DNA of 63,251 nt, counting the filler, from Octopus bimaculoides (taxonomy: Eukaryota): assembly GCF_001194135.2 (NCBI RefSeq). It is 7 parts of 6 records of this genome, joined end to end, with 100 filler letters (N's around TTAATTAATTAA, not from the genome) between each part and the next. Parts side by side here need not be neighbours in the genome. Positions count along the whole stretch, not along the records: positions 1 to 30,762 come from NC_068983.1; 6 more parts are not named here. One strand, 5' to 3'. The notes beneath the pieces are model-generated. The model saw only the letters and a list, made by a program, of their open reading frames with translations. It had not been told where the DNA came from and did no database searches. Of this stretch, positions 818 through 29,863 are shown piece after piece. Every line of letters starts with the position of its first letter. The stretch's first letter is position 1. Both the position numbers and the translations under genes were made by a program.

Positions 818-937
818 ATATTTAAAGTGATATTAATCCAAGATGGCAAAACTGATTCAATTGTTGGTTTTTATAATAGTGTCTACCTACCAACTATGAA
901 GACTTATATTTTACAGTTTGAACCTAACAAACAAACA
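818..937 (+). CDS. RB1: Retinoblastoma protein, exon encoding end of pocket B (IFKVILIQDGKTDSIVGFYNSVYLPTMKTYILQFEPNKQT)
   Basis: Pyrimidine tract plus CAG acceptor at 817; GTGAGT donor at 938; 120 nt, phase 0/0. Peptide resembles human RB1 [34 protein letters not shown] (recalled) better than p107/p130. Confidence 0.93.
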
Positions 938-1566: not shown

Positions 1567-1576
1567 NNNNNNNNNN

Positions 1577-6079: not shown

Positions 6080-6135
6080 ACTCCACCTCTCTCTTCTACA
6101 CCTAAGTCATGTGTAACCTCTTCACCAGTTTTCAG
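6080..6135 (+). CDS. RB1: RB exon, start of C-terminal domain (TPPLSSTPKSCVTSSPVF-S)
   Basis: TTTTCAG acceptor, GTAAAT donor; 56 nt, phase 0/2; S/T-P sites similar to RB1 PPTLSP...SSP. Confidence 0.85.
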
Positions 6136-6833: not shown

Positions 6834-7457
6834 TTCAGAAGCCATGAGAGCCGTATTCTGTGACCTCTTGTTTCACTTAGTCCATTTTGTCTTTCTCTGA
6901 ACTAAGGTGAATAAAAGGAGACACGTAGGATAAAGAGTCTTTGAAGCGGTCATAGGATGTGTGAGGAAAAATCATTGACAAAGAAACAAAAATAATAATA
7001 ATAAAGCATAAGTAAAGCTCAAACATATAGTGCTTGTGTTTAACTGGCAAAAAATGACCATCCCCAAGTATAACAATATCTGTTTCAACACATAATTTCA
7101 CATCAAGAATCTTGCAAAACAAATACATATACTTATCCTAATACCTTCTAATGAGCTCTACACAAAAATGTTACTGGAGAAAATGATAGACCTTATAAGG
7201 CACATAAGATGTAAGGTTTTTGTCTATGATCAAAGCACACCACCCTCTGAGGCCAATACATACAGTATCAAGTCTCGGAAGTTCCCACCTAGAATCAAGG
7301 AACTCAAGGCCTTTAAAGCAGACCTACTGTGCATAATACCCAGGTTGAAATTCCGTAAATCCTTTTCCCCTTTTCAAAGCAAACTTCATGAAGATATACA
7401 AAAAATAAGAAACTTTAACAGGTCCTTAATCTTCTCGGATAAGACTAAGAGCTTATA

Positions 7458-7605
7458 CATCATCATCATCATCATCGTTTAACGTCCGCTTTCCATGCTA
7501 GCATGGGTTGGACAACTTGACTGAGGACTGGTGAAACCGGATGGCAACACCAGGCTCCAATCTAAATTTGGCAGAGTTTCTACAGCTGGATCCCTTCCTA
7601 ACGCC
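7458..7605 (-). mobile_element. RTE 3'-tail element with (GAT)n tail, nested in the PLE
   Basis: Nearly identical to the 3' UTR of the RTE LINE at 20470-20616. Confidence 0.85.
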
Positions 7606-9835
7606 GATAGATACATATGCTTACGATAGGCTTTTAAATGATTCAGTCACACAAAAATACAGATATGCTTCCCAACACACTTACAATAACATTAACTGTG
7701 AGGCTAAACAGATAGCAGTTGACCTTGGTATAGCAGACAGAGTAAAGATCTTGGCCAAGAGAAATGCCTTTATAACTTTGAAAGACCACAAGCAAAAGTT
7801 TGCCTCTAACTCCAAATGCCGCTTGTTCAACCCAGCCAAGTCCAAGATCGATCAGGTGAGTAAGTATATACTGAGGAAATTAATGACAACATAAGAAGAT
7901 ACATGAGCCTCCCTCTATGGCACAGCACCTATGAGGTAACCTCATGGTTTATTGCCAACTAGGACAGAGGCAGGGCTAGATTTACATAGTTCGACATTGT
8001 CGACCTTTATCCATCTATTTCTAAAGAGTTATTGTTGAAAGCACTTTCCTTTGCCAAGGGCTTAACAGATGTTAGTGATAGTGATGTTAGAGTTATCATG
8101 CATGCCAGGAAGACGGTGCTGTTCAGCAAAGATTCGACTTGGGTCAAGCAATCTAACCCCAAGGACTCCTTTGATATAGCTATGGGAGCATATGACAGTG
8201 CCAATGTCTGTGATCTTATCAGACTGTACATCCTGGACATCTTAAAGAAGAGGTTTCCTTTGGTCCTCTTCAACTTCTACAGAGATGATGCCCTAGCCAT
8301 CTCTAGAGGAGCCAACAGCTAATTAGCACCTCAGGCTCAAAGGGTCTCAAGATCACCATTGAGATTAATCTCACTACAGTAGACTTCTTAAATGTTACTT
8401 TAGATCTGGGCTCTGGTACATACAGGCCCTATCACAAGCCAACTGAGAGACTGTCTTATATTATTAGCTCAGCCTCCTGCCACCCTCCTATAGTTTTCAA
8501 GAACCTAGTGAAAGGTGTAAGCAAGAGGATCTCAAATTTATCCTCGAGCCAAGATATCTTCGACGCCACTGCCTCCTACTACAATGAGGTACTGGTATTG
8601 AGTGGGTTTAAGACTGCATCTCTTACATGCCTGGCCCTAGCACCCGGACAAGGAAGTGCCGCAGAAATGTCGTTTGGTTTGGTCCACCCTTCTCGCTCAA
8701 CGTCAAGGCTTGTGTGGGAAAGATTTTCCTTAGATTGATGGACAAACGTTTCACACACACATAGATACAAGCATTTATTTAACAAGCACAACCTAAGAGT
8801 CTCCTTTAGTTGTGCACCTAACATAAAAAACATTTTAACAAGTACCCACAATACAAAGGAGGCAGGTTGCTCTTGTAAGGTATATAATAACTGTTCAGTA
8901 GGAGTCTGATGTAAGGGTGAAGGGGTCATTTATGATGCTACGGTGATACCTAGACTTGCTATCCGCATTAACAGTAATGTACCATCCAACAACAATATGA
9001 ATAGACTAACCAGATCTCATGCCAGTACGATTGCCACGCCCAGAGATAATAACCAGTCTGGGACCAGCATCATAGAGGGCATCACCAACAACCCCGGTAC
9101 CACCACCACAGATAATGAACAAACCATAGACACAGAATGACCAGGCTTGCAACATATGTTACCACTAGTACAATCGCCACACCTAGAGATGATGACCAAT
9201 CCAGGATAAGTGAGATGGAGGGAATATCCGGCATTTCCAGTACCACCACTACAGATGATGACCAAATAATTATCTTTGATACTGATGGGATGACTGGCCC
9301 TGCACCATATGTTACCAGGGGTGCCAATATGGCCTCATTCCATGCTTGTAAATTTATTGGATCTGTCAGTACTTCTTTCAGATGATATTTTCTTAACCTT
9401 CAGTTATCCTTCAGAGTCCTAGAAAGACAGTTTGTTACATCCCTGGCCCGCCATGTGTAGCACCTCAAAGATCAAGGGAACCTGTGTGATATCAGGTGGA
9501 AAATAATTATCATCCAGGCCCATATATTAATGGAAGTGGCCATTGCAAGATCTGTATTGTGGAGAGAGCCAAAATTCTTAAGGACTATATGAAACCATGT
9601 GCATTAAATAGTCTTAAAATGTGTTTTCTTAATGTGTCCACTTCAAGTGTTACCTACTGGAAAATTGGATCACCCAGTTTGCTGGTTAGGCCTTTTTGGG
9701 GTCTATAAGGGTTGTTTTATCCTCTGGTTCAGAGGAGACAACCCGTCCCCATTAACATTTTTTGTTAAGATGTATTTCTCGATTTCTGAGTGCTTCCTCA
9801 TGTCTGCGACGTAGAAATTAAAAATTTTTGTCTTT

Positions 9836-9900: not shown

Positions 9901-10064
9901 GTCCTAGATATAAAATTTTTTGTTGTAACAATTACTGTTCTATTCTTTAGAGTGTGCTTCTTTTCTGATATATGTTTTATTAATTAACNNNNNNNNNNTA
10001 TATATATATATAGAATCCGTCAACAACAGTGTAAGAGGGTAAAGACACCTTTCGGTCATGAATG

Positions 10065-10577: not shown

Positions 10578-10692
10578 TGTTGCAGGCAAGAAGAACTTTC
10601 ATGTGTCATATGCTAAAAGTCCACTGTTCAAGACACAAGGTCAACTTACTCCAAGGACAGATCAGTTGTACTGCTTTGTAGAAGGAGTTGGG
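10578..10692 (+). CDS. RB1: RB exon (VAGKKNFHVSYAKSPLFKTQGQLTPRTDQLYCFVEGVG)
   Basis: CCAG acceptor, GTAAGC donor; 115 nt, phase 2/0. LTPRTDQLYCFVEGVG aligns to RB1 MTPRSRILVSIGESFG. Confidence 0.9.
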
Positions 10693-11044
10693 GTAAGCTT
10701 CACATGTTTTCTATCTACTCATCTCAACTTCTTCATTGTAACAGCCTTTTCAGATTTTCTTTTTGTAATAATTACAATTAATCTCAATTTCTCTAATGAT
10801 ATAATTGTATTCTATTTCTTTTTGTTTATATATATATTAAAAAAAAAATTATATTGCATTTTATGAATAATTGCATGTTTTCTCCAACCAATGGGCCAAT
10901 CTCTGGTTTGCTGAATTTACAATGGCAAGGATGACAGACTGGGTAGAACAAATACCATACAGAATTTTAGTTTGAAAACATTAATTTATGAAACTTTTTT
11001 GCTGGTTTACATTGGTAAAAGTATGCACAAATACATGCACATGT

Positions 11045-11200
11045 GTGTTGTGTGGTTAAAAAGCTTGCTTTCCAACCATGTTGTCTTAGATTCAGCCCCA
11101 GTGTATGGCATCTTAGGCAGGTATCTTCTACTATAATCCCAGACCAATGAAAGCCTTGTGAGTGGATTTGGGAGACAGAAACTGAAAGAAGCTTGTTATG
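11045..11200 (+). mobile_element. SINE family A, 5' half
   Basis: tgtggttaaaaagcttgctttccaacc...gtgagtggatttgg..gaaactgaaagaagc. Confidence 0.8.
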
Positions 11201-11459
11201 TATGTATGTGTGTGCGCACACACCTGTGTATGTGATTCAACATGCCTTTGTCATTCTTGCCTCTAGAATTGCAATGAAACAGTGATTGGTGTGTTGGAAA
11301 CCTGTAACAAAAGACATTTGTTGATAATAAAATGTGATATAAAGTAAAAATACAAAATATCAAACTATGTTTTATCTTTCATTCATTTTACTATATTCTA
11401 TATTGCTCTTATACTCTGTTCTGTTTCTCTCTTCTCATGCTGTGTTTTTTTCCATGCTA

Positions 11460-11570
11460 TATTCTATTTCTCTCTTCCCATGCTATATTCTATTTCTCTC
11501 TTCCCATGCTATATTCTATTCCTCTCCCACCATACTATGTTATATTTCTCTCCCACTATACTATATTTTA
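11460..11570 (+). repeat. 26-bp minisatellite, 3-4 copies
   Basis: tatttctctcttcccatgctatattc repeated in tandem. Confidence 0.7.
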
Positions 11571-12160
11571 TTTCTCTATCATTCATTTAATGTGTTGCCT
11601 CTTCCTCTTCGTACTATGTTGTGTTTCTTTCTTACCCTTCTAAATTGTATTTCTCTTCTACCATTCTATGCCCTGTTCCTCTTCTTTCACTGTATATTTT
11701 GTTTGTCCTTTACTTTACTATATCCTGATTACCCCACCTCTTCATACTATCATGTGATTCCCACATTCTCCTGTAATGAAATAAAAGGCTTAATTTATTC
11801 ATTTATTTTTCATTCTAAATTTACTATGGATATTTCAGTTCTGATATTGCTGACAAAAGAATAATCATATGATACAACCAATTCTATTTAGGCTAAAATG
11901 AGCATGAGAAATTCTCTTACTTTACATCATGACTTTTTATTTTTCTATATAGTTTTTGGTAGTTATACTAGAGCTGAGGTTCAGACCTGTAGCTTTCATT
12001 ATGACCCTCAAAGATATATAAATATATTTATATCAAATTACTGTTCTTTGGGCCTCCAAATTCATGTTGTAGCCTCTTTGCTTTCTGTATTTTATTAATC
12101 ATTTTGTCACTTTCAAAGCAAACAACATAAGTAATAAAATTGCTTTTATTTACCTGCCAG

Positions 12161-12303
12161 TCTGCTGAGAAATTACGTAACATCAATGATACCATTGCTC
12201 AAAGCCGAGCTCAGAAACGTCTTCAGTTTGACAACTTAGACAATGACTCCACTAGGAACACAGCTAAAAGGCCGCGTGATGGGATGGATGCTTCTGCCAA
12301 CAG
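12161..12303 (+). CDS. RB1: RB exon (SAEKLRNINDTIAQSRAQKRLQFDNLDNDSTRNTAKRPRDGMDASAN-R)
   Basis: CCAG acceptor, GTAGGA donor; 143 nt, phase 0/2. SAEKLRNIN aligns to RB1 TSEKFQKIN; KRLQFD resembles RB1 KKLRFD. Confidence 0.9.
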
Positions 12304-12881
12304 GTAGGAATTCTGCATGCACATGTGTATGTGTGCACACGCACACACACACGTGCACATATGTGAATGCTATTGATGCATGCCTGACCAAATGATTAAG
12401 AATGCTTTGCAATCATGAGATCCAGGGTTCAATCCCACTGTATGTCATCTTGGGTGTGTGTCTTTTCTCATAACCTCTGATTAATGCAAGCTTTATGAGG
12501 GAAACTGTGGAGGGAGAAACTGTTGAAGCATATTGTGTGAATTGTACTCATAATTCAAAGGATTGGTTTTGTCACACAATGTATCTTGCTGCTTCTGTTT
12601 GAGGATTAAGTTAAAGGTTGAAGTGTCTGTGGGATATTCAGCCACTTCACATGCTGATTCAATGAGTTAAGCAGTCAAGCTGCTTGAACAACTGGAATAC
12701 TTCATTGCTGATAACAATGAGAAGTATTTGTTTATTTTTCTCATGCTAAGATTAATACTTGTAGCAGTTGGTGAGTAATGCCTGCATATATCATCATCAA
12801 CGTTTTGATGTCTACTCTTATCACTTTTATCACATAAAGTCAAGGCAAGGAGACAATAACACACACACACACACACACATG

Positions 12882-13100
12882 CATCATCATCATCGTCATC
12901 ATTTAATATCCGTTGTCCATGCTGGCATGGGTTGGACAATTTGATCAGAGCTGGCAAGCTGGGGAGCTGCACCAAATTCCTGTCTGATTTGGCATGGTTT
13001 CTGTGGACGGATGCCCTTCCTAAGCCAACCACTTTGCAGAGCATGCTGGGCACTTTTATGTGGCACCGCATGGGCACTTTTACATGGTGCCACCACAAGT
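12882..13100 (-). mobile_element. RTE 3'-tail element
   Basis: (CAT)n followed by the reverse complement of ggaagggcatcc...acccatgccagcatgga. Confidence 0.8.
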
Positions 13101-14479
13101 GTTTTATATCACCAGAGGGACCAGTTTTAACACTTCTGCTGCGAAGTATGGGTATTCTTGAGTAGACCAGGCATCTCGGACTTTTGTCATCTCACCAGCA
13201 GTGCACTTTAGTGTTTATACACCCCACCCCTTTGTTTTGACAATATGTGACAGTCATACAAGCAGTGTCATTCATTAATAGCATTCTGCAAAAAAATGTC
13301 TGCCTGTGGGGAGGTATTATTTGCTTGCAAGCAGGCAAGGGTTGGGTAAAAGGAAGGCTGTCTGACCATAGAAAATTTGCTTCCATAAACTCTATCTGAC
13401 CCATGCAAGCGTAGAGAAGTGGATGTCCTAGTTCAGTGTTGCTTTCTGCTTCTGCAACCTGAAAGCTTAGAGAATCTGTTTTTTATTTAATTGCTTTGTG
13501 TTAGAGTAAGCTGGTAGGTGGTTTAGGTTTATAAAAGCATTCTATTTGGAACAGATTTTTTTTAATTGCTGGTTGTCCTTCCTGCTTGCTGCTAGCTATT
13601 CAACTCTGATGTAGTGGTGGGACAAGCAGAGTTATGTACCCTGCCTTAAGGCTTTGGCGTACAATATATTAACACTAGAATCGTTTTGACCACTAAGCTC
13701 TCTAACATTTTTATCCCACACCCATTATTACCACATTTGAGTGTGTGTGTATGTTTGTATCCCCTTGTCTTGACATCACGTGAGTGTTGTAAAAAAGTGT
13801 CACTGTCATATAAGAAATATTATTTCCAATATTCTGGAAGAACATGTCTGGCCATGAGAGAAATATTATCTAGCTTGGAAACAGGTGAGGGTTGGCAACA
13901 GGAAGGGCGTCTGACCAGAAAATCTACATGGAAATCTTACCTAACTTGGAAACAAGTAAGGGCACCTGGCTATGAAAGTCTGTATGGAAAAGTCTGTATG
14001 TTGTTATGTCACTGCTGCTGCTGCCAACCACTGTTTAGGATGAAGAAATATAAAAGAAGACATCATTAGATTAGTCTGGTGGAAAAGGCTGTGCTCATGG
14101 CTTTTGCTGGCTCTCAAAGATTGGTGTGGTTGCTGTTCAGTTTTGGGCCTAGAGGGGTGGACACAATATCAGTAATGAAAGGAGGAGTGACAAATAAGTT
14201 GGAAATGTCTGAGTGTGTAGGCGTCATGAGTCTGACAAATCCTGGGGAGCAAGTGCCACTGTAGTTATGGCATAAAAAAATAATGGAATGAGAAGCCAGA
14301 GATTGAAGTGTGTTGATGAGTGACTTCATACAAACCAAGTTATGTAATTTTTCCTTTAATGCAGTGTAGGATGTTTGTATGTGTAGTAACAACCATTGCA
14401 GATGTTGAGTTATATTCTGTAGTGGATCTTACCTGAGTTTTGTAGAGGGTTAGTAACTGTTAAGATCTGAAATATTTCC

Positions 14480-14845
14480 TGCCCAGTTTTTGTGATACAG
14501 ACTTGGCTAAGATGAAGAGCATGAAGATCTGTTGAGCATCAAACAATGCCTTGTGTTATTTAGTTACATTCTGGCTTTAAAATAATGATGAACCTATTGT
14601 ATACAGTTCCCAGGTGCACTACAACTCATAGAAAAAGTAGCCAAAACTGCTTGAACAGTACATAGAATATGCACAGGTAGTGAACAGTGAATAAGTCATT
14701 AAAAAAAAAACAAGGTTAGGGGGCATCAGGTGTACTGTTGGTGTATTTTAGGAAGTATGGAAGTTTTGAAGGATGTAGTGTCTTGACGGCTAAGAGCTGA
14801 TGCTGGTAGTTTATTCCATGCTTCAGCAATTCCTGCTAGGTAAAA
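14480..14845 (-). mobile_element. CR1/L2-type LINE 3' end
   Basis: Minus frame IAEAWNKLPASALSRQDTTSFKTS matches the WNKLP..V...S...FK C-terminal motif of CR1/L2 elements. Confidence 0.65.
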
Positions 14846-15512
14846 TAATTAACCAAACAATAGTTGTTGTGTTTCAATTAAATTAACTGAACTTTCCTAC
14901 AAAATTTGCGATCTTATGGTTATGTTGGAAATCATTATTGTCAGTTATTATAATTGTTATGGTAGCTAACTGGTGGAATCATTAAAGCACCAGAAAAATA
15001 AGTTCAAATTTGCTTTTTGTCCTTTTGGAGTTGATAAAATGGAATATCAGTTAAATATTGGGGTTAATGTAATTGACTAATCTCCTTCCTCAAAATTGCT
15101 GGGTTTGCACCCAAATCAGAGACCACTGTTATTAATATTATTATATTAGGGCAGTGGAATGATAGAAGCATTAGAGTGTAGGACAAAGTATCTTGCAGTA
15201 TTTCTTCCAGCACTTTACATTCCTAGTTCAAATCCTGCTGAGGTCGATAAAATAGCGTACCAGTCAAGTCTTGGGCTTGCCTCCTTCCAAATTTGCTTTT
15301 CATACTTCCTGGGTTGATGAAATAACATACCAGTCAAATCTTGGAGTTGAAATAATTCACTATTCTCCACCATCACCCTCACAGATTTCAGGCCTTGTGC
15401 CTATGTTAAATACATTATTGTTGTTATAAGTTCTGTATTGGTCAAAGCAGCATATTAATATCACAAAAATCTAGCAACAACATGTCTCCTTAACACTTTG
15501 GAAGTTATCCAG

Positions 15513-15905
15513 TTGTGGCTGTGTGGTTAAGTAGCTTGGTTCCTAACTATGAGGTCTTGGGTTCAGTCTCACTGCATGGCACCTTGGGCAAGTGTCTTCT
15601 TCTATACCTCTGGTCCAATCAAAGTATTGTGAGTGGATTTGGTGGACAGAAACTAAGGGAGACCTGCCATATATGTGTATGCTCTAGTCTAGACATCACA
15701 TGATGGTTGTAAATGAGCTTCATTGTCATACAAGCGAGGTTGTTTCCTGTCTTTTGTGGAAAACATGTTTAACTATGGGAAATATTACCTTGCTTGGAAA
15801 CAGGTGAGGGTTGGTGACAGGATGGGTACCAGGCTGTTGAAAAGCTACCTTGATAAATTCTGTTGGCTCCATGCAAGCATGGAAAAGCAGATGTTAAATG
15901 ACTTG
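15513..15905 (+). mobile_element. SINE family A head with RTE-like tail (composite SINE)
   Basis: gtggctgtgtggttaagtagcttg head; ttggaaacaggtgagggttgg...catgcaagcatggaaaag tail; similar to 13730-13960. Confidence 0.7.
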
Positions 15906-16043
15906 CCAGTTTCTTAAACTCCTATTTTGCTGCTGTTTCCTCTGTTCCTGGGATAACTTTCATTTGCATATCTCAAACTTTTCTTAGTTCTCTGAACATA
16001 TTCTTTATTATTGCTGTTGTTACCATTTCTCCTTTTCCTCTAG

Positions 16044-16128
16044 ATCTGAAACCAATACCTGGAAAGACCCTTCTTTTAAACCCCCAACCCCAGTCAGCTC
16101 AAGAGTCTGTACCACACCAGCAAAGGAG
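16044..16128 (+). CDS. RB1: RB extra exon (SETNTWKDPSFKPPTPVSSRVCTTPAKE)
   Basis: Long pyrimidine tract plus TAG acceptor, GTATGT donor; 85 nt, phase 2/0; keeps frame; has TP sites including TPAK. Confidence 0.78.
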
Positions 16129-16266
16129 GTATGTATGGCATAGAGAGATTGTTAACTGTTAAAATAATCATATTTTTTCTTATATTTAATACTAATTATA
16201 TATTTTAATGATGAGTCTATAATTTTTAATAATAGTATCAACTTTTAATGATAATTACTGTTTCTT

Positions 16267-16492
16267 TTAACCCTTTAGAATTTAGACCAGTCATATGTGG
16301 CCAAAATATTTGACCTATTTTATGTTCAAACCATCCAGATCCAGCCTCTCACATCTGCCCTACAATGTCATTCTAACAATAAACAATCACATCATTGAAA
16401 TCTTGAAGCCACAAGATAATGCATGACTCATTCAAAACAATGTGAATAAATAAGCATTACATTTGACTTTAATCTGAATGCTAAAGTGTTAA
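16267..16492. mobile_element. piggyBac-type MITE
   Basis: TTAA-CCCTTTAG...CTAAAGTG-TTAA termini; paralogous to 23975-24360. Confidence 0.75.
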
Positions 16493-16967
16493 TAATTACA
16501 TTTTGTTTTTAATGATAATTTTGTTTCTGTATTTGGTTTGCAAGCTTCTTAATGTGAAATGTGTTGAAACAGATTTCATTGTAACTTGGAAGGGTCATTT
16601 TGCCAATAACAAACACACACACTAGTTCTGTTTCACTTCTTTTATTAATATTAATCAACTTGTTAACCATTTAATCATTTTATTAATCAATTGACTAATC
16701 ATTCAGTCAATTAATCAATCAGTCAGCTAGATTCATTATAGTCATTTTGTTGCCATTTGTGACCTCATCAATGATATTTTCTCTGTCATAGAGAAGGCAT
16801 GAATGATGAAAGTACACTGATGAACCAAGCTGATGACTGAACTGTTGACTAATAATAATAAGAGAGGTGCATGATTATATTATTGTCTTATTGATAATTA
16901 TTTTGTTCTCCCCTTCAAGAGAAATTCTTAAATGTTGTTAAATTTTTCTTGTATATTGTTTTTAAAG

Positions 16968-17077
16968 TCTGCTGAAAAGAAAGAACAATCATCTCCAATG
17001 TCACGTTATATGTCATCAGCTCTGAAGAAGACACAGCGCTTTCTGCAATTTGATGACATTCAACCTGCTTCTGAAAA
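16968..17077 (+). CDS. RB1: RB extra exon, paralogous to 12161-12303 (SAEKKEQSSPMSRYMSSALKKTQRFLQFDDIQPASE-N)
   Basis: TTTTAAAG acceptor, GTGAGT donor; 110 nt, phase 0/2; open frame; repeats SAEK and LQFD. Confidence 0.8.
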
Positions 17078-17411: not shown

Positions 17412-17842
17412 AACTTTGCTGAGGACATGACAACATCCTTGATGCTGGTGCCTTGATAACATGTACCTAGTACATTCTGTAAAGTGCCTATGATAGGAAG
17501 GGCATTCAACCAGAGAAACCTGTCAGAAATGGAATGTGCTAGCGAACCATGGCCCCAATCTGTCTAGGAGAGCATAAATTCCAAATAAGAACTAACTTGG
17601 CCCTTGACAACTCTCATTCACTTTGTGCCACCTTGGTAAAGAAGATGCAAAATGATGATGATGGAATAAGCTTTTATATTTATAACATATAAATATGTTA
17701 TAAATCCCAAGTATTAACACTTTATTTCTAGGCTGAATCTTCATACTTTAATTCTATATTCAGAAATATAAATTTCTAATTTTATGTTGGTGTAAAATTT
17801 TATTGGAATAAATATTGTCCAATTAAAATTCATTCTAGCATA

Positions 17843-17955
17843 AGAAGTAAGAAGTTTGCTTCCCAACCACATAGTTCCAGGTTCAGTCCCTCTTCCTCGG
17901 CCAACCAAACTTTTGTGAGTGGATTTGGTGGATAGAAACTGAAAGAAGTCCATTG

Positions 17956-17990
<35 letters not shown>
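17843..17990 (+). mobile_element. SINE family A, 5' half
   Basis: taagaagtttgcttcccaaccacat...gtgagtggatttgg..gaaactgaaagaag. Confidence 0.8.
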
Positions 17991-18284
17991 ATTTTTTTCT
18001 TTTTCTTTTGAGCCTGGTACTTATTCTATTGGCTTCTTTTTGACAAACTGCTAATAATCCGAATGTTAAAGGGTTTGGGACACTCTTTTGCTCTTCATCA
18101 GTTGTTTTTGTTTAACATGGTAGCTAATTATAAATACTTACCCATCTTATCAAGCAGTGTTAACATTAGAATAAAAGGATGAAAATGAAAATATTAAAAT
18201 GTTCTCCCCTGCTGGTAAAAATGTTACTTAAATAGCCATATGGAGCCTGTTCCTTGTCATTAATTCCAAAATAACTATTTTCAG

Positions 18285-18375
18285 TGAAGTTAACAACTCG
18301 GCTGATAGTCGACCTGGGTCTTTGGCAGTGGACAGTTCTCAAAAAGAAAGAAAAGAAAACACAATGGAGAAATGA
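18285..18375 (+). CDS. RB1: RB terminal coding exon (EVNNSADSRPGSLAVDSSQKERKENTMEK*)
   Basis: TTTTCAG acceptor in phase 2 continues the frame to TGA at 18373-18375; ends in EK like RB1 NKEEK; AATAAA downstream. Confidence 0.78.
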
Positions 18376-18525
18376 TTGTTGCTCTTTAAAGTTTGGTGCT
18401 GTAAACTGACAAATGGATATTTTCAGCTGTAAGTTATTGTTTGTTGGAAATTTTATTGGATAACTGAGATGTGTAGTTGTAATTTAGTGCCTTGATAGGT
18501 AAGGTTATTTTTGCTTTGGTTTAGA

Positions 18526-19339: not shown

Positions 19340-20616
19340 CTTTAACATGGTAGTAACTCTAGTAGGTAGTAACTCTATAAGATGTACCCGGTGCAAGCTA
19401 TGGACACATAAGAGGTGCAGCAACATCAAAGGCAGGTTAACTAGCAAGTTAGTTTTTGTTTGTGGCAGATGTTCAGGTGCAATAAAGACTGCAAACAAAC
19501 AGGAAACAACTTCTATCTCATTCCAGGGTGAAAAACTAGAGGTAGTCGATAGCTTCCGCTATCTGGGCGACCAAGTTAGTAGTGGGGGTGGGTGCGCTGA
19601 AAGTGTAGCTGCTAGAATAAGAATAGCCTGGGCAAAGTTTAGAGAGCTCTTACCCCTGCTGGCGACAAAGGGACTCTCACTCAGAGTAAAAGGCAGACTG
19701 TATGACGCATGCGTACGNNNNNNNNNNNNNNNNNNNNNNNNNNNNNNNNNNNNNNNNNNNNNNNNNNNNNNNNNNNNNNNNNNNNNNNNNNNNNNNNNNN
19801 NNNNNNNNNNNNNNNNNNNNNNNNNNNNNNNNNNNNNNNNNNNNNNNNNNNNNNNNNNNNNNNNNNNNNNNNNNNNNNNNNNNNNNNNNNNNNNNNNNNN
19901 NNNNNNNNNNNNNNNNNNNNNNNNNNNNNNNNNNNNNNNNNNNNNNNNNNNNNNNNNNNNNNNNNNNNNNNNNNNNNNNNNNNNNNNNNNNNNNNNNNNN
20001 NNNNNNNNNNNNNNNNNNNNNNNNNNNNNNNNNNNNNNNNNNNNNNNNNNNNNNNNNNNNNNNNNNNNNNNNNNNNNNNNNNNNNNNNNNNNNNNNNNNN
20101 NNNNNNNNNNNNNNNNNNNNNNNNNNNNNNNNNNNNNNNNNNNNNNNNNNNNNNNNNNNNNNNNNNNNNNNNNNNNNNNNNNNNNNNNNNNNNNNNNNNN
20201 NNNNNNNNNNNNNNNNNNNNNNNNNNNNNNNNNNNNNNNNNNNNNNNNNNNNNNNNNNNNNNNNNNNNNNNNNNNNNNNNNNNNNNNNNNNNNNNNNNNN
20301 NNNNNNNNNNNNNNNNNNNNNNNNNNNNNNNNNNNNNNNNNNNNNNNNNNNNNNNNNNNNNNNNNNNNNNNNNNNNNNNNNNNNNNNNNNNGGCACATAA
20401 AAGACACCATTTCGAGCGTGGCCGTTTTCGTGCGGGTGACACGTAAAAGCACCCACTACACTCTCTGAGTGGTTGGCGTTAGGAAGGGCATCCAGCTGTA
20501 GAAACTCTGCCAAATCAGACTGGAGCCTGGTGTTGCCATCCGGTTTCACCAGTCCTCAGTCAAATCGTCCAACCCATGCTAGCATGGAAAGCGGACGTTA
20601 AACGATGATGATGATG
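19340..20616 (+). mobile_element. 5'-truncated RTE-clade LINE (C-terminal ORF and 3' UTR, gap inside)
   Basis: SIRCTRCKLWTHKRCS...FVCGRC...LEVVDSFRYLGD...RIRIAWAKFRELLPLL...KGRLYDACV, ending in a (GAT)n tail. Confidence 0.9.
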
Positions 20617-21197
20617 GTGTAGTTATTCAACATTGAAGTTACTGCACTTTCAGTAATTCTCATTGGAGTTGTTCCAATTTGCTCACTAGTATGTGTTGTC
20701 AGATCTTCCATAATCTTTCAGATGCTATAATTTTGTTGTTGTTGGGGTGGGGCTAAATTTTTCTGTAATCCTTCGTCAAAAACGGGCCTGTTCTTTACTA
20801 TTTTGAGATTGCTAGAAATAAATGATAGAGAACTGAATGAAAGGAGAAAGAAAGAAAAATTTCTATTTTACTTTATTGAATTTAATAGATTTGTATGTCA
20901 GTATAATCCAGCTTATAATATTCTATCTTTAATTGCAGCTCCTGTTATAAAACTTGAAGTATTTTGTGACCATCGATGCTGCTTACTTCTGTAAACTATC
21001 TTCCATTTGGTAAACCAGGCCGTTTTAGCAGCAAACTTTAATTCTATCTCTTAGAAGCCCTCTTCTGCTTTTTCAGTTTCCAATAGCCTAGTGACATTTC
21101 TCTGTTGTGCTCTTGTTAACATTCCAGCATAAACTTGCTATTTTTTCTGCTAACTCTGTTCTGAGTGGATTACTCTTTGAACGCTGCTGGAGAATAT
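20617..21197 (-). pseudogene. Decayed coding relic of unknown family (possible spliced pseudogene or Gypsy/Ginger pol remnant)
   Basis: Acceptors at 21198 and 20812 and a GTAAGC donor at 20986 join in one frame with 4 stops; the stop in the distal part is a sense codon in the inverted copy at 18759-18909. Confidence 0.4.
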
Positions 21198-25640: not shown

Positions 25641-28339
25641 ATGTGTGTGTGTGTGTGTGTATTTCTTTAATATCAGAAAGCTATTTTGCTCAGAAGTAGA
25701 GTGCCAAGTTTTAAGACTTTGTCTTTCAGAGATCGTCTTTTCAATATTGACTCACACACAGTGTACATTATACAAACTAAAGGAAGGTTTTACAATGAAG
25801 TATTATTGGGTTGTGGTATACAGCTCAATTCTGTAACATTACTTTTTTTTTTCCTTATTTTTTTTCTTTAATGAAATTTTATTCATTCTCTGCTGTTAAT
25901 CCTGTTGTTTCTGTTGGCAGTTGGGTGTCATTTTGGACCCTAACAATGATCTAACTCCATATCTGGTTCCATAAAATAGTTGTTGGTACTTTATAATATT
26001 TCTGTAGGTTTGGAATTCATATGTTGACTCATTTTCAAGTTAACAAAGTTTTCCTAATCACAATTACTAATTAAACTGATTTCTATTCCTAACATCACAA
26101 TGACTGTGTGCCATGTTGACAGTGTTGGTATTTTCCTTCACCAGGTGTCATCACTTCTGCTCACTGTGACACCTGATATTCAAATCTTCCCAATACAAAT
26201 GTATTTATTTATTGAACTATTGATGAAATAAAGCAATTAAATGCCTTGAAAATATTTTGTTCTTAATATAAAATCTTTTCTTGTTAACACAAAGACAAAC
26301 TCTCAGTATGTTAAATCTTAGATATTCTATTGAACTCCTTGTTGTAAGTGTGTTTTATTCACTTAGATAGTATTGGTCTCACACCATGCTTTCATTTGTC
26401 TCTTCCTGAAAAGTTAGCAGCCACATCAACTACATGGTATCTTTAAATCAAAAGTTTTAAGACATTTGAAGATGTAAAATAATGAACTAATGCTTCACTT
26501 GAACATCTATCTTTCTATTCTGTGCTAGTGTGTCACTGAGGGTGTCTCTCTGCTCAGGTAGCTAGAAATAACAAGCAAACTTCCCCCAAATCATTCTAAA
26601 CCATCTTAAAAAATAAGGTAAGACACATTAATTAATGTAGTCCAGAGTACAATGTTATTTCTATAAAAAAAAAAAAAGAAACGGTCTTCACTGGTTATAG
26701 CTCTACTCAGGGCTGATTTATGACTAAACAACATCTGTGTTTGGTCTAGCAGAAGTGATTGATTGAGGTTGTCTTTGGATAACTTGCTTTTTGCTTGTAT
26801 GTCTCTTTCACCTATAATTGCCATTGATTCTAATGAGTTATCAAGCACAGGAAACTCAACCAACTAATTGCTTCAGACAGGTGACACATTTCACTTGCAA
26901 TATTATCTTTATGTTCTGGTATTAAAAAAAATATTCTGAGTATTAAACATTGATAAAGAATTAATTGAAAGGAAACTAACATATTATTTTGAGAAATATA
27001 GCAAAAGTGAATTCAAAGACCCAGTATTTCTAATATTTTGGAAGGATCATCATAGGTCGTTGAGGAAGTCTTAATAATTTGCCTACCCAGAGCATTTTCA
27101 TAAATTTGTCTTAACCATCCATGCTTGTTTTCAGACTTTTAGTTAGCCCTTGTTTCATATGTTTTGAGTAATGTAAAGCTGTCCTTTCATAAGGCTCACA
27201 GTACTCTGCTAGTTGAAATGAATTGGGAATGTGTATCATATATAATGTATGGATACAAGGGAAATATGACCTGTGTATCAGCAGTGATACAAAGGGCAGG
27301 CAAAAGGTTAAAAATAAAGGTGCCTAGTTACTACAGCAACTCTAATTAATCTAAACCTTTCAAACAAGTAGTTGTTTCATAAACCATGGGATATTTCTTC
27401 CTCATGAAACATGACTACAATCATACCTACATTAGATTCAGGTTCATAAAGAAAGGAAAATAGAAGTGATATTCAAGATTTTCCTAAACAAGTAATATGC
27501 TTGTTTTTATTGGAAATTGAAAACTGGGCTATGTATTAATGCATTTATGGGCTAGTGCCACATATGTATATATGATAAGTAGCCAACCAGCCCTATTTTC
27601 TGTGTGAAGAGAATAACATTTGCTTATAAACTATAGGTTAGTCAAATGGATCACGTGTGTCCGGCTGCTATTTCTTTTCGTTCTTGGACTCCCCAAGCTC
27701 GCATGTACTTCTTTGCCCCTCCTGTTTGTGTTTCACAGCGTTCAATACATACACACTTCACGTCTGGCTCTACAGCCTTTTTGCTTGTTTGTTTATTCAC
27801 CGTTTCGTTTTCCGTCCGCCACTACCCTCCACGAAAATAATTTAATTTGTGTTCGTGGGAAGAACCATTTCAACGATGTGTACTGCCTTAATTCTTCAAA
27901 ACGGTGGTGTTTTAATGGTGGCAGCTGATGAAGGAGATGTTTCTATGTGGCTTGCTTGTTTGTTGTACCTTGTTTATCATTTTGTCCATGTTCTTTTGCC
28001 ATGTCATGTACCCAATTATGTATCTATATGTACATGTAGATGAAGGTATGTNNNNNNNNNNNNNNNNNNNNNNNNNNNNNNNNNNNNNNNNNNNNNNNNN
28101 NNNNNNNNNNNNNNNNNNNNNNNNNNNNNNNNNNNNNNNNNNNNNNNNNNNNNNNNNNNNNNNNNNNNNNNNNNNNNNNNNNNNNNNNNNNNNNNNNNNN
28201 NNNNTATATATATATATATATATATATATGCAAATATGTGTGTGACAGAGGACTGAGATATGTGGTGCATTGCTGTACTCAAGAAGACTCACCCACTACA
28301 ACAGAATTGAATTGGGATCCTAAAATCAAAGTGCCATGT

Positions 28340-29339: not shown

Positions 29340-29863
29340 TGTCGGCCTTGACATTTCCTGTGTCCTTATGTTTGCGAGGGAGGGGGGTCAAACTCCTCCA
29401 CCCAGCCTAGCCTGCATTCAGGGACATGTTTCTGAGTCTTTGCTAGTCCAGGCTGATGACGAGCAAAGACTCAGNNNNNNNNNNNNNNNNNNNNNNNNNN
29501 NNNNNNNNNNNNNNNNNNNNNNNNNNNNNNNNNNNNNNNNNNNNNNNNNNNNNNNNNNNNNNNNNNNNNNNNNNNNNNNNNNNNNNNNNNNNNNNNNNNN
29601 NNNNNNNNNNNNNNNNNNNNNNNNNNNNNNNNNNNNNNNNNNNNNNNNNNNNNNNNNNNNNNNNNNNNNNNNNNNNNNNNNNNNNNNNNNNNNNNNNNNN
29701 NNNNNNNNNNNNNNNNNNNNNNNNNNNNNNNNNNNNNNNNNNNNNNNNNNNNNNNNNNNNNNNAAAGACTCAGAAACATGTCCCTGAATACAGGCTAGGC
29801 TGGGTGGAGGAGTTTGACTCCCCTTGCAAACATAAGGACACAGGAAATGTGTCAAGGCCGACA
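29340..29863. repeat. About 105-bp-arm inverted repeat (PLE pLTR-like fold-back) spanning a gap
   Basis: 29340-29444 is the reverse complement of 29764-29863 with few differences; aaagactcag appears on both sides of the gap. Confidence 0.85.
29449..29786 (+). ncRNA. Minimal type I hammerhead ribozyme, intact core (about 50 nt once the gap is closed)
   Basis: CAGG-CTGATGA-c-GAG caaaga CTC-a-GAAA-CATGT-C-CCTG; palindromic stem III ACATGT; GUC cleavage triplet. Confidence 0.65.

What the first reader, a model, noticed from the sequence alone, without database searches (positions are those of the whole stretch)
10578..17077. RB1 C-terminus carries a tandemly duplicated exon module with two cyclin/PP1-type docking motifs
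Seen: exons 12161-12303 and 16968-17077 have identical phases (0/2), both start SAEK and both contain LQFD. In these motifs every nucleotide difference is at a third codon position (TCTGCTGAGAAA vs TCTGCTGAAAAG; CTTCAGTTTGAC vs CTGCAATTTGAT), while the rest has diverged. Each is preceded by a phase 2/0 exon with a TP site (LTPRT; TTPAK). Known: human RB1 has one KKLRF motif, an overlapping cyclin RxL and PP1 docking site. KRLQF and RFLQF both fit [RK]xLxF. Inference: an old, selected duplication gives this RB two docking sites plus extra CDK sites, which could uncouple kinase and phosphatase binding that compete in mammals.
Basis: partly seen in the sequence, partly recalled or inferred. Interest (0 to 1): 0.75.

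Follow-up and report, generated by a model that had tools for sequence, protein, structure and literature searches.

The report
Duplicated docking module in octopus RB1
The octopus retinoblastoma (RB1) gene carries a second, diverged copy of the two exons that encode its C-terminal regulatory segment, so cephalopod RB1 has two cyclin/phosphatase-type docking motifs where other sampled animals have one; the copy is old, always spliced in and under purifying selection, but what it binds is untested.

Summary
The window is the 3' end of Octopus bimaculoides RB1 (XP_052822290.1). Exons 10578-10692 and 12161-12303 (module A) and 16044-16128 and 16968-17077 (module B) have the stated phases and peptides.

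- **Splicing.** RNA-seq shows junctions 10692>12161, 12303>16044 and 16128>16968. No skipping was seen.
- **Distribution.** Module B is present in O. vulgaris, O. sinensis, Argonauta hians (same exon phases) and a cuttlefish. It is absent from an oyster (locus searched), a snail, an annelid, a crinoid, two hemichordates and human.
- **Motif counts.** [RK]xLxF occurs twice in octopod C-terminal tails, three times in cuttlefish, and once or never in the others.
- **Selection.** Octopus-Argonauta dN/dS is 0.19 for B1 and 0.07 for B2, like module A and the pocket exon.
- **Duplication.** Cuttlefish module B aligns colinearly with oyster module A (score 70; 0 of 30,000 shuffles reach it). It does not align with the sequence after the motif in other species.
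- **Conservation within B.** The best-kept blocks are TTPxK and K[KR]TQRxLxFDD.

So there is an ancient, selected tandem duplication that predates the octopus-cuttlefish split. Docking of cyclin-CDK or PP1, and any uncoupling of the two, remain inference. This is a new variant of a known kind, of moderate interest.

The parts
818..937 (+). RB1 exon encoding the end of pocket domain B (IFKVILIQDGKTDSIVGFYNSVYLPTMKTYILQFEPNKQT), phase 0 to phase 0
   Evidence: AG/GTGAGT flanks. Weak RB_B hit. Identical to residues of XP_052822290.1. Same 120-nt exon in Argonauta.
6080..6135 (+). 56-nt exon, TPPLSSTPKSCVTSSPVF, phase 0 in, 2 bases over
   Evidence: Predicted from the CAG|GT end implied by read overhang. 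Confirmed by the annotated protein and by a 56-nt Argonauta exon.
10578..10692 (+). Module A, exon A1 (115 nt): (S)VAGKKNFHVSYAKSPLFKTQGQLTPRTDQLYCFVEGVG. It holds the TP site matching human T826 and the LYxFxEG strand region.
   Evidence: RNA depth edges and junction 10692>12161. Rb_C Pfam match. Alignment to human 786-888 scores 64, 0 of 5,000 shuffles reach it.
12161..12303 (+). Module A, exon A2 (143 nt): SAEK...KRLQFD...AKRPRDG. It corresponds to human RB1 exon 25.
   Evidence: RNA depth edges and junctions. Rb_C match.
12215..12232 (+). Docking-type motif 1, KRLQFD. It aligns with human KKLRFD, residues 873-878 in my own numbering of the remembered human sequence.
   Evidence: Sequence. 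Multi-species alignment. Motif count.
16044..16128 (+). Module B, exon B1 (85 nt): (R)SETNTWKDPSFKPPTPVSSRVCTTPAKE. It is a diverged copy of A1 lacking the strand region.
   Evidence: RNA junctions 12303>16044 and 16128>16968. 85-nt exon with the same phases in Argonauta. dN/dS 0.19.
16111..16125 (+). TTPAK, a full-consensus CDK site (TPxK). TTPxK is invariant in octopods and cuttlefish.
   Evidence: alignment.
16968..17077 (+). Module B, exon B2 (110 nt): SAEKKEQSSPMSRYMSSALKKTQRFLQFDDIQPASE
   Evidence: RNA depth and junction. 107-nt exon with the same phases in Argonauta. dN/dS 0.07. One substitution versus about 18 in the flanking introns among close relatives.
17037..17057 (+). Docking-type motif 2, RFLQFDD (cuttlefish RHLRFDD), inside the conserved block K[KR]TQRxLxFDD
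18285..18428 (+). Last coding exon of the main isoform: (N)EVNNSADSRPGSLAVDSSQKERKENTMEK, stop at 18373-18375, followed by a GTAAGT donor at 18429
   Evidence: Depth begins exactly at 18285 and ends near 18430. Sequence. Annotated protein.
20939..20957 (+). Start of a downstream exon. Joined directly to 17077 it would encode (N)SCYKT-stop, the C-terminus annotated for O. sinensis RB1. It is probably also the 3'UTR exon of the main isoform.
   Evidence: Sequence search and P0027. No reads were laid here.

Best explanation
The window holds the last exons of Octopus bimaculoides RB1. Before octopods and cuttlefish diverged, the genomic segment carrying the two exons of the RB C-terminal core was duplicated in tandem. 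Module A is exons A1+A2, matching human exons 23/24+25.

The unit starts and ends with the same codon offset, so the extra copy (module B, exons B1+B2, 65 residues) is in frame. It is included in every spliced read seen.

The copy lost the stretch that in human RB forms the E2F1-DP1-binding strand. It kept, under purifying selection, the K[SD]PxFK stretch, S/T-P sites (a new full-consensus TPxK among them) and the motif Q[KR]xLxFD.

**Inferred mechanism.** Module B is a second, self-contained cassette of CDK sites plus a docking site. RFLQFDD fits both the cyclin hydrophobic-patch motif ([RK]xLxF) and the PP1 RVxF-type motif. In human RB one such site is shared and contested by cyclin-CDK and PP1. 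A second site would raise the avidity for these enzymes, or let both be bound at once, and would direct phosphorylation of the extra TP/SP sites.

**Shown:** the exons, splicing, conservation, selection and duplication. **Inferred:** the binding partners and any regulatory consequence.
For: **Gene identity**
- Rb_C hit of 26.7 bits against a cut-off of 21.
- The C-terminus is identical to XP_052822290.1.

**Splicing**
-. All 21 reads leaving 12303 continue into 16044.

**Conservation**
- Module B is found in O. vulgaris, O. sinensis, Argonauta and a cuttlefish.
- Argonauta exon lengths are 115/146/85/107 with identical phases.

**Restriction to cephalopods in the sample**
- There is one strict [RK]xLxF in the C-terminal tail of the oyster, annelid, crinoid, both hemichordates and human, and none in the snail model (KRLNM).
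- There are 2 in octopods and 3 in cuttlefish.
- No hidden second module exists in the oyster locus.

**Selection**
- dN/dS is 0.19 for B1 and 0.07 for B2, against 0.17 for A1, 0.05 for A2 and 0.14 for the pocket exon, at dS 0.56-0.94.
- Among close relatives there are about 18 intron substitutions versus 1 in exon B2 (my Poisson estimate p about 0.02).

**Duplication**
- Cuttlefish B versus oyster A scores 70, and 0 of 30,000 shuffles reach it. With the motif removed the score is 42, p=0.009.
- Versus hemichordate A p=0.0005, versus human A p=0.0015. Versus the post-motif tails it is not significant.
- A model of non-cephalopod module A matches module B colinearly.
- The intron falls at the same aligned position and phase.

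**Known biology**
- PP1 and cyclin-CDK compete for an overlapping site in the RB C-terminus (review PMC9161509).
- RxL docking on Rb is described in preprint 10.1101/397448.
Against: - No binding or phosphorylation data exist. Fitting a short motif pattern is weak evidence on its own.
- Octopus module B against its own module A is barely detectable. BLASTP finds nothing. The profile-profile comparison aligns only the 14-column motif, with probability 16% and P=0.0016.
- The case for homology rests largely on the less diverged cuttlefish copy.
- The single-sequence AlphaFold model puts RFLQF inside a predicted helix. Cyclin and PP1 bind such motifs in extended form.
- Sampling outside cephalopods is thin: one bivalve and one gastropod (a possibly truncated model). 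There is no Nautilus, squid or other mollusc class.
- The cuttlefish has a third KCLKFD where octopus has AKRPRDG. Such motifs can therefore also arise or vanish locally.
Confidence: 0.6

Rival explanations
1. There was no duplication. Module B is ordinary lineage-specific disordered tail sequence in which a second [RK]xLxFD motif (and in Octopus the SAEK start) arose by convergence.
For: - Octopus A versus B similarity is confined to short motifs.
- SAEK at the start of B2 is SSEK in Argonauta and TPQK in cuttlefish.
- The cuttlefish has a third KCLKFD, which shows local motif turnover.
Against: - Cuttlefish B aligns colinearly over about 60 residues with module A of oyster, hemichordate and human. 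0 of 30,000 shuffles reach the score, and it stays at p=0.009 with the motif removed.
- The intron sits at the same aligned position and phase.
- There is no similarity to the post-motif tails.
Confidence: 0.08
2. Exon B2 is the cephalopod version of the RB-family C-terminal docking helix recognised by cyclin D-CDK4/6. It is not a linear RxL/RVxF site.
For: - AlphaFold (single sequence) predicts a 21-residue helix at B2 residues 10-30, pLDDT about 80-89. The human helix 895-915 has the same length.
- A C-terminal helix is reported across metazoan RB proteins.
- Cephalopod tails otherwise lack the core pattern.
Against: - The core pattern (hydrophobic, x3, L, x6, R; from F897/L901/R908) is absent from B2 and from the whole cephalopod tail.
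- The helix-forming stretch is not conserved in cuttlefish (GPRHVTPNT, with prolines), while RxLxFDD is.
- Module B is homologous to module A, not to the tails that carry the helix.
Confidence: 0.1
3. The conserved basic-hydrophobic block of module B serves another partner, for example importin-alpha as extra nuclear localisation signal, or a ligase or adaptor binding the RB C-terminus.
For: - In human RB the KKLR of the docking site is also half of the bipartite NLS crystallised with importin-alpha (1PJM matched).
- Module B keeps K[KR]TQR next to the motif.
Against: - The invariant residues extend to L, F and DD, which an NLS does not need.
- Octopus already has KR...KRPR in module A.
Confidence: 0.1
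4. Module B is an annotation or assembly artefact, or a rarely used cassette.
For: B1+B2 total 195 nt, so skipping would stay in frame.
Against: - 21 of 21 junction reads from 12303 go to 16044 in three libraries.
- Exon depth is similar to neighbouring exons.
- A contig from a run under another organism label shows the same junction.
- Module B is present in independent genomes and transcript contigs of five cephalopods.
Confidence: 0.02

Closest known systems
Human RB1 C-terminal KxLxF site (KKLRFD), the overlapping cyclin-CDK and PP1 docking site
   Same: - Octopus motif 1 (KRLQFD) aligns with it in an exon of the same length and phases.
- Motif 2 (RFLQFDD) has the same pattern and acidic continuation, and lies C-terminal to TP/SP sites.
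   Different: - Human and the other non-cephalopods sampled have one strict copy; cephalopods have two or three.
- Motif 2 sits in a copy that lacks the E2F1-DP1-binding strand.
- Binding has not been tested in any cephalopod.
RB-family C-terminal cyclin D docking helix (human Rb 895-915; F897, L901, R908)
   Same: - Lies downstream of the KxLxF site near the C-terminus.
- B2 is predicted to be helical over 21 residues.
   Different: - The core residue pattern is absent.
- The helical stretch is not conserved in cuttlefish.
- Module B is homologous to the Rb_C core, not to the helix-bearing tail.
Tandem exon (module) duplication within genes
   Same: Adjacent copies, identical exon phases, frame-neutral unit, colinear residual similarity.
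   Different: - Both copies are included together, not spliced as mutually exclusive alternatives.
- The second copy is reduced to its short linear motifs.
Multi-RxL CDK substrates (human Rb itself has 5 loose RxL sequences in unstructured regions)
   Same: Several docking sequences in one disordered tail.
   Different: Here the second site is a conserved, full [RK]xLxF-acidic copy produced by duplicating the whole regulatory module.

Membership tests
RB1 / pocket protein family | Rb_C C-terminal domain following pocket domain B | tested here: met
   - Rb_C scores 26.7 bits against a cut-off of 21 on module A.
- RB_B has a weak hit on the exon fragment.
- The full annotated protein carries PF11934, PF01858, PF01857 and PF08934.
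RB1 / pocket protein family | Orthology to RB1 rather than p107/p130 | tested here: inconclusive
   - Module A aligns with human RB1 786-888; score 64, 0 of 5,000 shuffles reach it.
- Sources name the protein retinoblastoma-associated protein.
- The 143-nt, phase 0/2 exon equals human RB1 exon 25 by my recollection only.
- No comparison with p107/p130 was run.
Cyclin hydrophobic-patch docking motif (RxL / KxLxF) | Pattern [RK]xLxF in a disordered region | tested here: met
   KRLQF and RFLQF are the only two RxL matches in the octopus tail.
Cyclin hydrophobic-patch docking motif (RxL / KxLxF) | Conserved as an island within variable sequence | tested here: met
   K[KR]TQRxLxFDD is kept between octopods and cuttlefish, while module B overall is 42% identical.
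Cyclin hydrophobic-patch docking motif (RxL / KxLxF) | Physical binding to a cyclin and enhancement of phosphorylation | not testable with these tools
   Needs pull-down and kinase assays.
PP1 RVxF-type docking motif | Pattern [RK]-x(0,1)-[VIL]-{P}-[FW] | tested here: met
   R-F-L-Q-F and K-R-L-Q-F fit by inspection. The pattern definition is from my own knowledge.
PP1 RVxF-type docking motif | Binding to the PP1 catalytic subunit | not testable with these tools
   Needs a binding assay.
RB C-terminal cyclin D docking helix | Hydrophobic(i), L(i+4), R(i+11) on one face of a helix of about 21 residues | tested here: not met
   - A helix is predicted.
- The pattern is absent from all three cephalopod tails and present in human and Ptychodera.
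- This is a simple regex; the published weight matrix was not available.
Tandem exon-module duplication | Adjacent copies with the same exon phases | tested here: met
   A1 and B1 start with one base completing a codon and end in phase 0. A2 and B2 start in phase 0 and end 2 bases over, in both Octopus and Argonauta.
Tandem exon-module duplication | Sequence similarity beyond chance between the copies | tested here: met
   - Within Octopus it is weak: shuffle p=0.002 and BLASTP finds nothing.
- Via cuttlefish B against module A of other phyla it is strong: 0 of 30,000 shuffles reach the score.

The most novel reading that the evidence does not exclude
Coleoid cephalopod RB1 lacks the cyclin D-type C-terminal docking helix and instead has a duplicated 'CDK sites plus RxLxF' cassette. 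With two equivalent docking sites, cyclin-CDK and PP1 could sit on one RB molecule at the same time. The kinase/phosphatase competition that shapes RB switching in mammals would then be replaced by a different logic in this lineage.
Probability: 0.15. Interest if true: 0.7.

Novelty: new variant of a known kind. Interest (0 to 1): 0.5.

Why it matters
RB is the central brake on cell-cycle entry. In mammals its C-terminal KxLxF site is where the inactivating kinases and the reactivating phosphatase compete.

Cephalopods offer a natural variant with two such sites. By my own estimate of the octopus-cuttlefish split, it has been kept for more than 200 million years. It allows a direct test of whether that competition is essential or can be relaxed, using peptides and recombinant proteins.

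It is also a clean example of how duplicating a whole exon module, and then eroding it down to its short linear motifs, adds regulatory sites to a disordered tail.

The proteins are already in public databases. I found no paper on cephalopod RB in one full-text search.

Tried and rejected
- **Word-index protein searches.** Searches with my spliced C-terminal peptides found nothing, although the identical protein is in that collection. The index evidently missed it, so those two negatives mean nothing.
- **Spliced query to the representative library.** A single pocket-B exon worked and opened up all the comparative data.
- **Laying reads on long stretches.** Others were swamped by intronic repeats. 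Short single-exon stretches worked.
- **Junction 17077>18285.** It was never displayed directly, because the loose-end tables were truncated.
- **Runs labelled organisms B and C.** They are too close to be informative beyond one comparison: about 2-3% intron divergence and an identical RNA contig.
- **PDB sequence search with the octopus tail.** It found only a chance phage-fibre match.
- **Module B against human 889-928.** There is no similarity, so module B is not the counterpart of human exons 26-27.
- **A human internal repeat.** SEKFQKINQM versus ESKFQQKLAEM, which I noticed by eye, did not reach significance. The best local alignment was a different one, p=0.02.
- **DNA comparison of the two modules with their introns.** Only chance words were found.
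- **Pfam on intronic ORFs.** It did not confirm my impression that they are reverse-transcriptase remnants.

Full report
**What is in the sequence.** On the + strand the window carries the last exons of an RB-family gene. I mapped seven:
- 818-937, the end of pocket B
- 6080-6135
- 10578-10692 (A1)
- 12161-12303 (A2)
- 16044-16128 (B1)
- 16968-17077 (B2)
- 18285-18428, with the stop at 18373-18375

The mapping rests.
- A2 and B2 both begin in phase 0 with SAEK, both contain LQFD, and both end two bases into a codon.
- A1 and B1 both begin with one base completing a codon, contain a TP site, and end in phase 0.
- The remark that all differences lie at third codon positions adds nothing. It follows from the amino acids being identical. 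It only shows that the identity is not recent.

**Transcription.** I used three deep RNA-seq libraries of the same species.
- Coverage starts and stops exactly at the exon edges.
- Reads leaving 10692 continue with the first bases of 12161 (18 reads).
- Reads leaving 12303 continue with the first bases of 16044 (21 reads, agreement 0.99-1).
- 18 reads join 16128 to 16968 across a GT..AG intron.
- Exon depths are similar, roughly 5-17, so module B is constitutive in these samples.
- A contig from a run under a second organism label shows the same B1-B2 junction.
- Junction 17077>18285 was never displayed. It is implied by exact depth edges and by the annotated protein.

**Identity.**
- Module A matches Pfam Rb_C above its cut-off; module B alone matches nothing.
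- Module A aligns with human RB1 786-888 (score 64, none of 5,000 shuffles as high). I wrote the human sequence from memory. Residues 829-874 were verified against PDB 2AZE chain C. The residue numbers of the far C-terminus agree with those quoted in preprint 10.1101/397448.
- A search starting from the pocket-B exon and one follow-up search retrieved the gene's own product. It is Octopus bimaculoides retinoblastoma-associated protein XP_052822290.1, 988 residues. Its C-terminus is identical to my spliced reconstruction.
- By my recollection human RB1 exon 25 is also 143 nt with the same phases, starting TSEK. I could not check this here.

**Distribution.**

| Species | Module B | Strict [RK]xLxF in the C-terminal tail |
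|---|---|---|
| Octopus bimaculoides, O. vulgaris, O. sinensis | present | 2 |
| Argonauta hians | present | 2 |
| Cuttlefish (Acanthosepion pharaonis genome model, near-identical transcript contigs) | present | 3 |
| Oyster Saccostrea echinata | absent | 1 |
| Snail Bulinus truncatus | absent | 0 (has KRLNM) |
| Tubeworm Lamellibrachia satsuma | absent | 1 |
| Crinoid Antedon mediterranea | absent | 1 |
| Hemichordates Ptychodera flava, Saccoglossus kowalevskii | absent | 1 each |
| Human | absent | 1 |

- Sequences and names come; the counts come.
- Lamellibrachia has an extra match, SRILQF, but it lies in the last pocket-B helix, not in the tail.
- In the oyster locus, a model built from module B finds only the normal A2 exon. 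No second [RK]xLxF[DE] is encoded anywhere downstream.
The sample lacks Nautilus, squids and several mollusc classes.

**Gene structure elsewhere.**
- In Argonauta the six exons are 120, 56, 115, 146, 85 and 107 nt, all with AG/GT and the same phases as in Octopus.
- In the oyster, A2 (119 nt, phase 0, 2 bases over) is followed by one 90-nt exon and then the last exon. That 90-nt exon starts and ends with the same codon offset. It has no internal phase-0 intron and no SxEK.
- The A1+A2 unit starts and ends with the same codon offset. A tandem genomic duplication of it is therefore automatically in frame.

**Selection.** Between Octopus and Argonauta the figures are as follows.

| Exon | dN/dS |
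|---|---|
| Pocket B end | 0.14 |
| A1 | 0.17 |
| A2 | 0.05 |
| B1 | 0.19 |
| B2 | 0.07 |

- Synonymous divergence is high: dS is 0.56 for module B and 0.94 for module A.
- The B1-B2 introns of the two species share no BLAST-detectable similarity.
- Among very close relatives, the 336 intron bases flanking B2 carry about 18 substitutions and three indels. The 110 exon bases carry one substitution, 17001 T>C (Ser to Pro). That change matches the O. vulgaris and O. sinensis proteins.
- By my Poisson arithmetic, one or fewer exon changes where about six are expected has p of roughly 0.02.

**Is it a duplication?**
- Within Octopus the evidence is modest. BLASTP finds nothing. A Smith-Waterman alignment of the two modules scores 40 against a shuffle mean of 23 (p=0.002).
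- Exact SAEK at the exon start has probability 1.8e-4, and a second shared 4-mer 0.024.
- The profile-profile comparison aligns only the 14 columns around the motif (P=0.0016, probability 16%).
- The less diverged cuttlefish copy settles the question. It aligns colinearly, from ESTFKSP to QRHLRFD, with module A of the oyster (score 70; the maximum of 30,000 shuffles is 68).
- With the docking motif cut off, that alignment still scores 42 (p=0.009).
- It also aligns with module A of Ptychodera (p=0.0005), human (p=0.0015) and Lamellibrachia (p=0.0055).
- Neither cephalopod module B resembles the sequences that follow the motif in those species.
- A model built only from non-cephalopod module A matches all three B modules colinearly (empirical p<0.001 to 0.05).
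- The alignments show a gap in B where A has the SRxLYxFG stretch. In human RB that stretch lies in the piece crystallised with E2F1-DP1 (2AZE).

I conclude that B is a paralogous, reduced copy of A. It was made before the octopod-decapodiform split and after the divergence from the bivalve and gastropod lineages sampled.

**What it probably does.** Across octopods and cuttlefish the best-conserved parts of B are TTPxK, a full CDK consensus, and K[KR]TQRxLxFDD.
- The latter fits the cyclin hydrophobic-patch motif and the PP1 RVxF-type pattern, as does motif 1.
- RxL sequences on Rb promote phosphorylation by cyclins E, A and D (preprint 10.1101/397448).
- The TP/SP sites of B lie about 15, 28 and 37 residues upstream of the motif. 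By my own knowledge, that is the usual arrangement for a docking site serving CDK sites.

My best reading is that module B is a second 'CDK sites plus docking site' cassette. It raises avidity or allows two enzymes to be bound at once. This is inference; nothing here measures binding.

**A rival I took seriously.** B2 might be the cephalopod form of the cyclin D docking helix, reported across metazoan RB proteins.
- AlphaFold without an alignment predicts a helix over B2 residues 10-30. It also predicts a long helix for A2.
- The core pattern taken from F897/L901/R908 is absent from all cephalopod tails and from the oyster and crinoid tails. It is present in human and Ptychodera.
- The helix-forming stretch is replaced by a proline-containing sequence in cuttlefish, while RxLxFDD is kept.

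The cephalopod tails therefore seem to lack that helix altogether. This makes the extra RxLxF site more interesting but proves nothing.

**Novelty and verdict.** The proteins are annotated in public databases, so the exons themselves are not new. I found no paper on cephalopod RB in one full-text search. I rate the duplicated docking module as a new variant of a known kind, of moderate interest. The mechanistic half is open and directly testable.

Noticed in passing
window 18285-18428 and 20939-20957: The last coding exon behaves like a cassette. It ends at a GTAAGT donor 53 nt after the stop codon. A downstream exon starting at 20939 would, if joined directly to 17077, encode NSCYKT-stop. That is the C-terminus annotated for O. 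sinensis RB1; Argonauta isoform X2 ends NS-stop. RB1 may therefore have a short-tail and a long-tail isoform, both keeping module B.
   Followed up: partly
cuttlefish proteins P0004/P0023, aligned to window 12270-12290 (AKRPRDG): The cuttlefish has a third KxLxFD motif (AVKCLKFDG) where octopods have AKRPRDG or AKRQRCDG. This suggests local gain or loss of docking-type motifs on top of the module duplication.
   Followed up: no
RB tails of Octopus, Argonauta, cuttlefish, oyster and crinoid (proteins P0022, P0001, P0023, P0024, P0005): The core pattern of the cyclin D docking helix (hydrophobic, x3, L, x6, R) is not found in these tails. It is present in human and Ptychodera. This sits uneasily with the published statement that the helix is present across metazoan RB proteins. 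It was tested only with a crude regex.
   Followed up: partly
window 10948-11395, 12740-12963, 15428-15875, 16324-16547, 17805-18008: Intronic repeats have RNA-seq depth tens to thousands of times that of the RB1 exons (up to about 2,600 at 17958-18008). Many reads join them in inverted or back-jumping order. These are highly expressed dispersed repeats, not RB1 transcripts.
   Followed up: no
window 7168-8322 and 19347-19717: Long intronic or downstream ORFs look like mobile-element remnants to me. Pfam gave no hit for the first group and only a sub-threshold PHD-finger match for the ORF at 19347, which runs into an assembly gap.
   Followed up: partly
window 17001: T>C (Ser to Pro, SSPMS to SSPMP) is found in two runs labelled organism C and in the O. 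vulgaris and O. sinensis proteins. It is the only exon B2 difference among close relatives. A third run with the same organism label (X52) lacks it and shares intron variants with organism B, so that label may cover two lineages.
   Followed up: partly
window 1567-1576, 9989-9998, 19718-20391, 28052-28204, 29475-29763: Runs of N (assembly gaps) lie next to microsatellites. None touches an RB1 exon.
   Followed up: no
human RB1 841-851 versus 894-904 (not in the window): By eye, TSEKFQKINQM and ESKFQQKLAEM resemble each other. This hints at an old internal repeat in vertebrate RB1 as well. Standard alignment statistics did not support it.
   Followed up: partly
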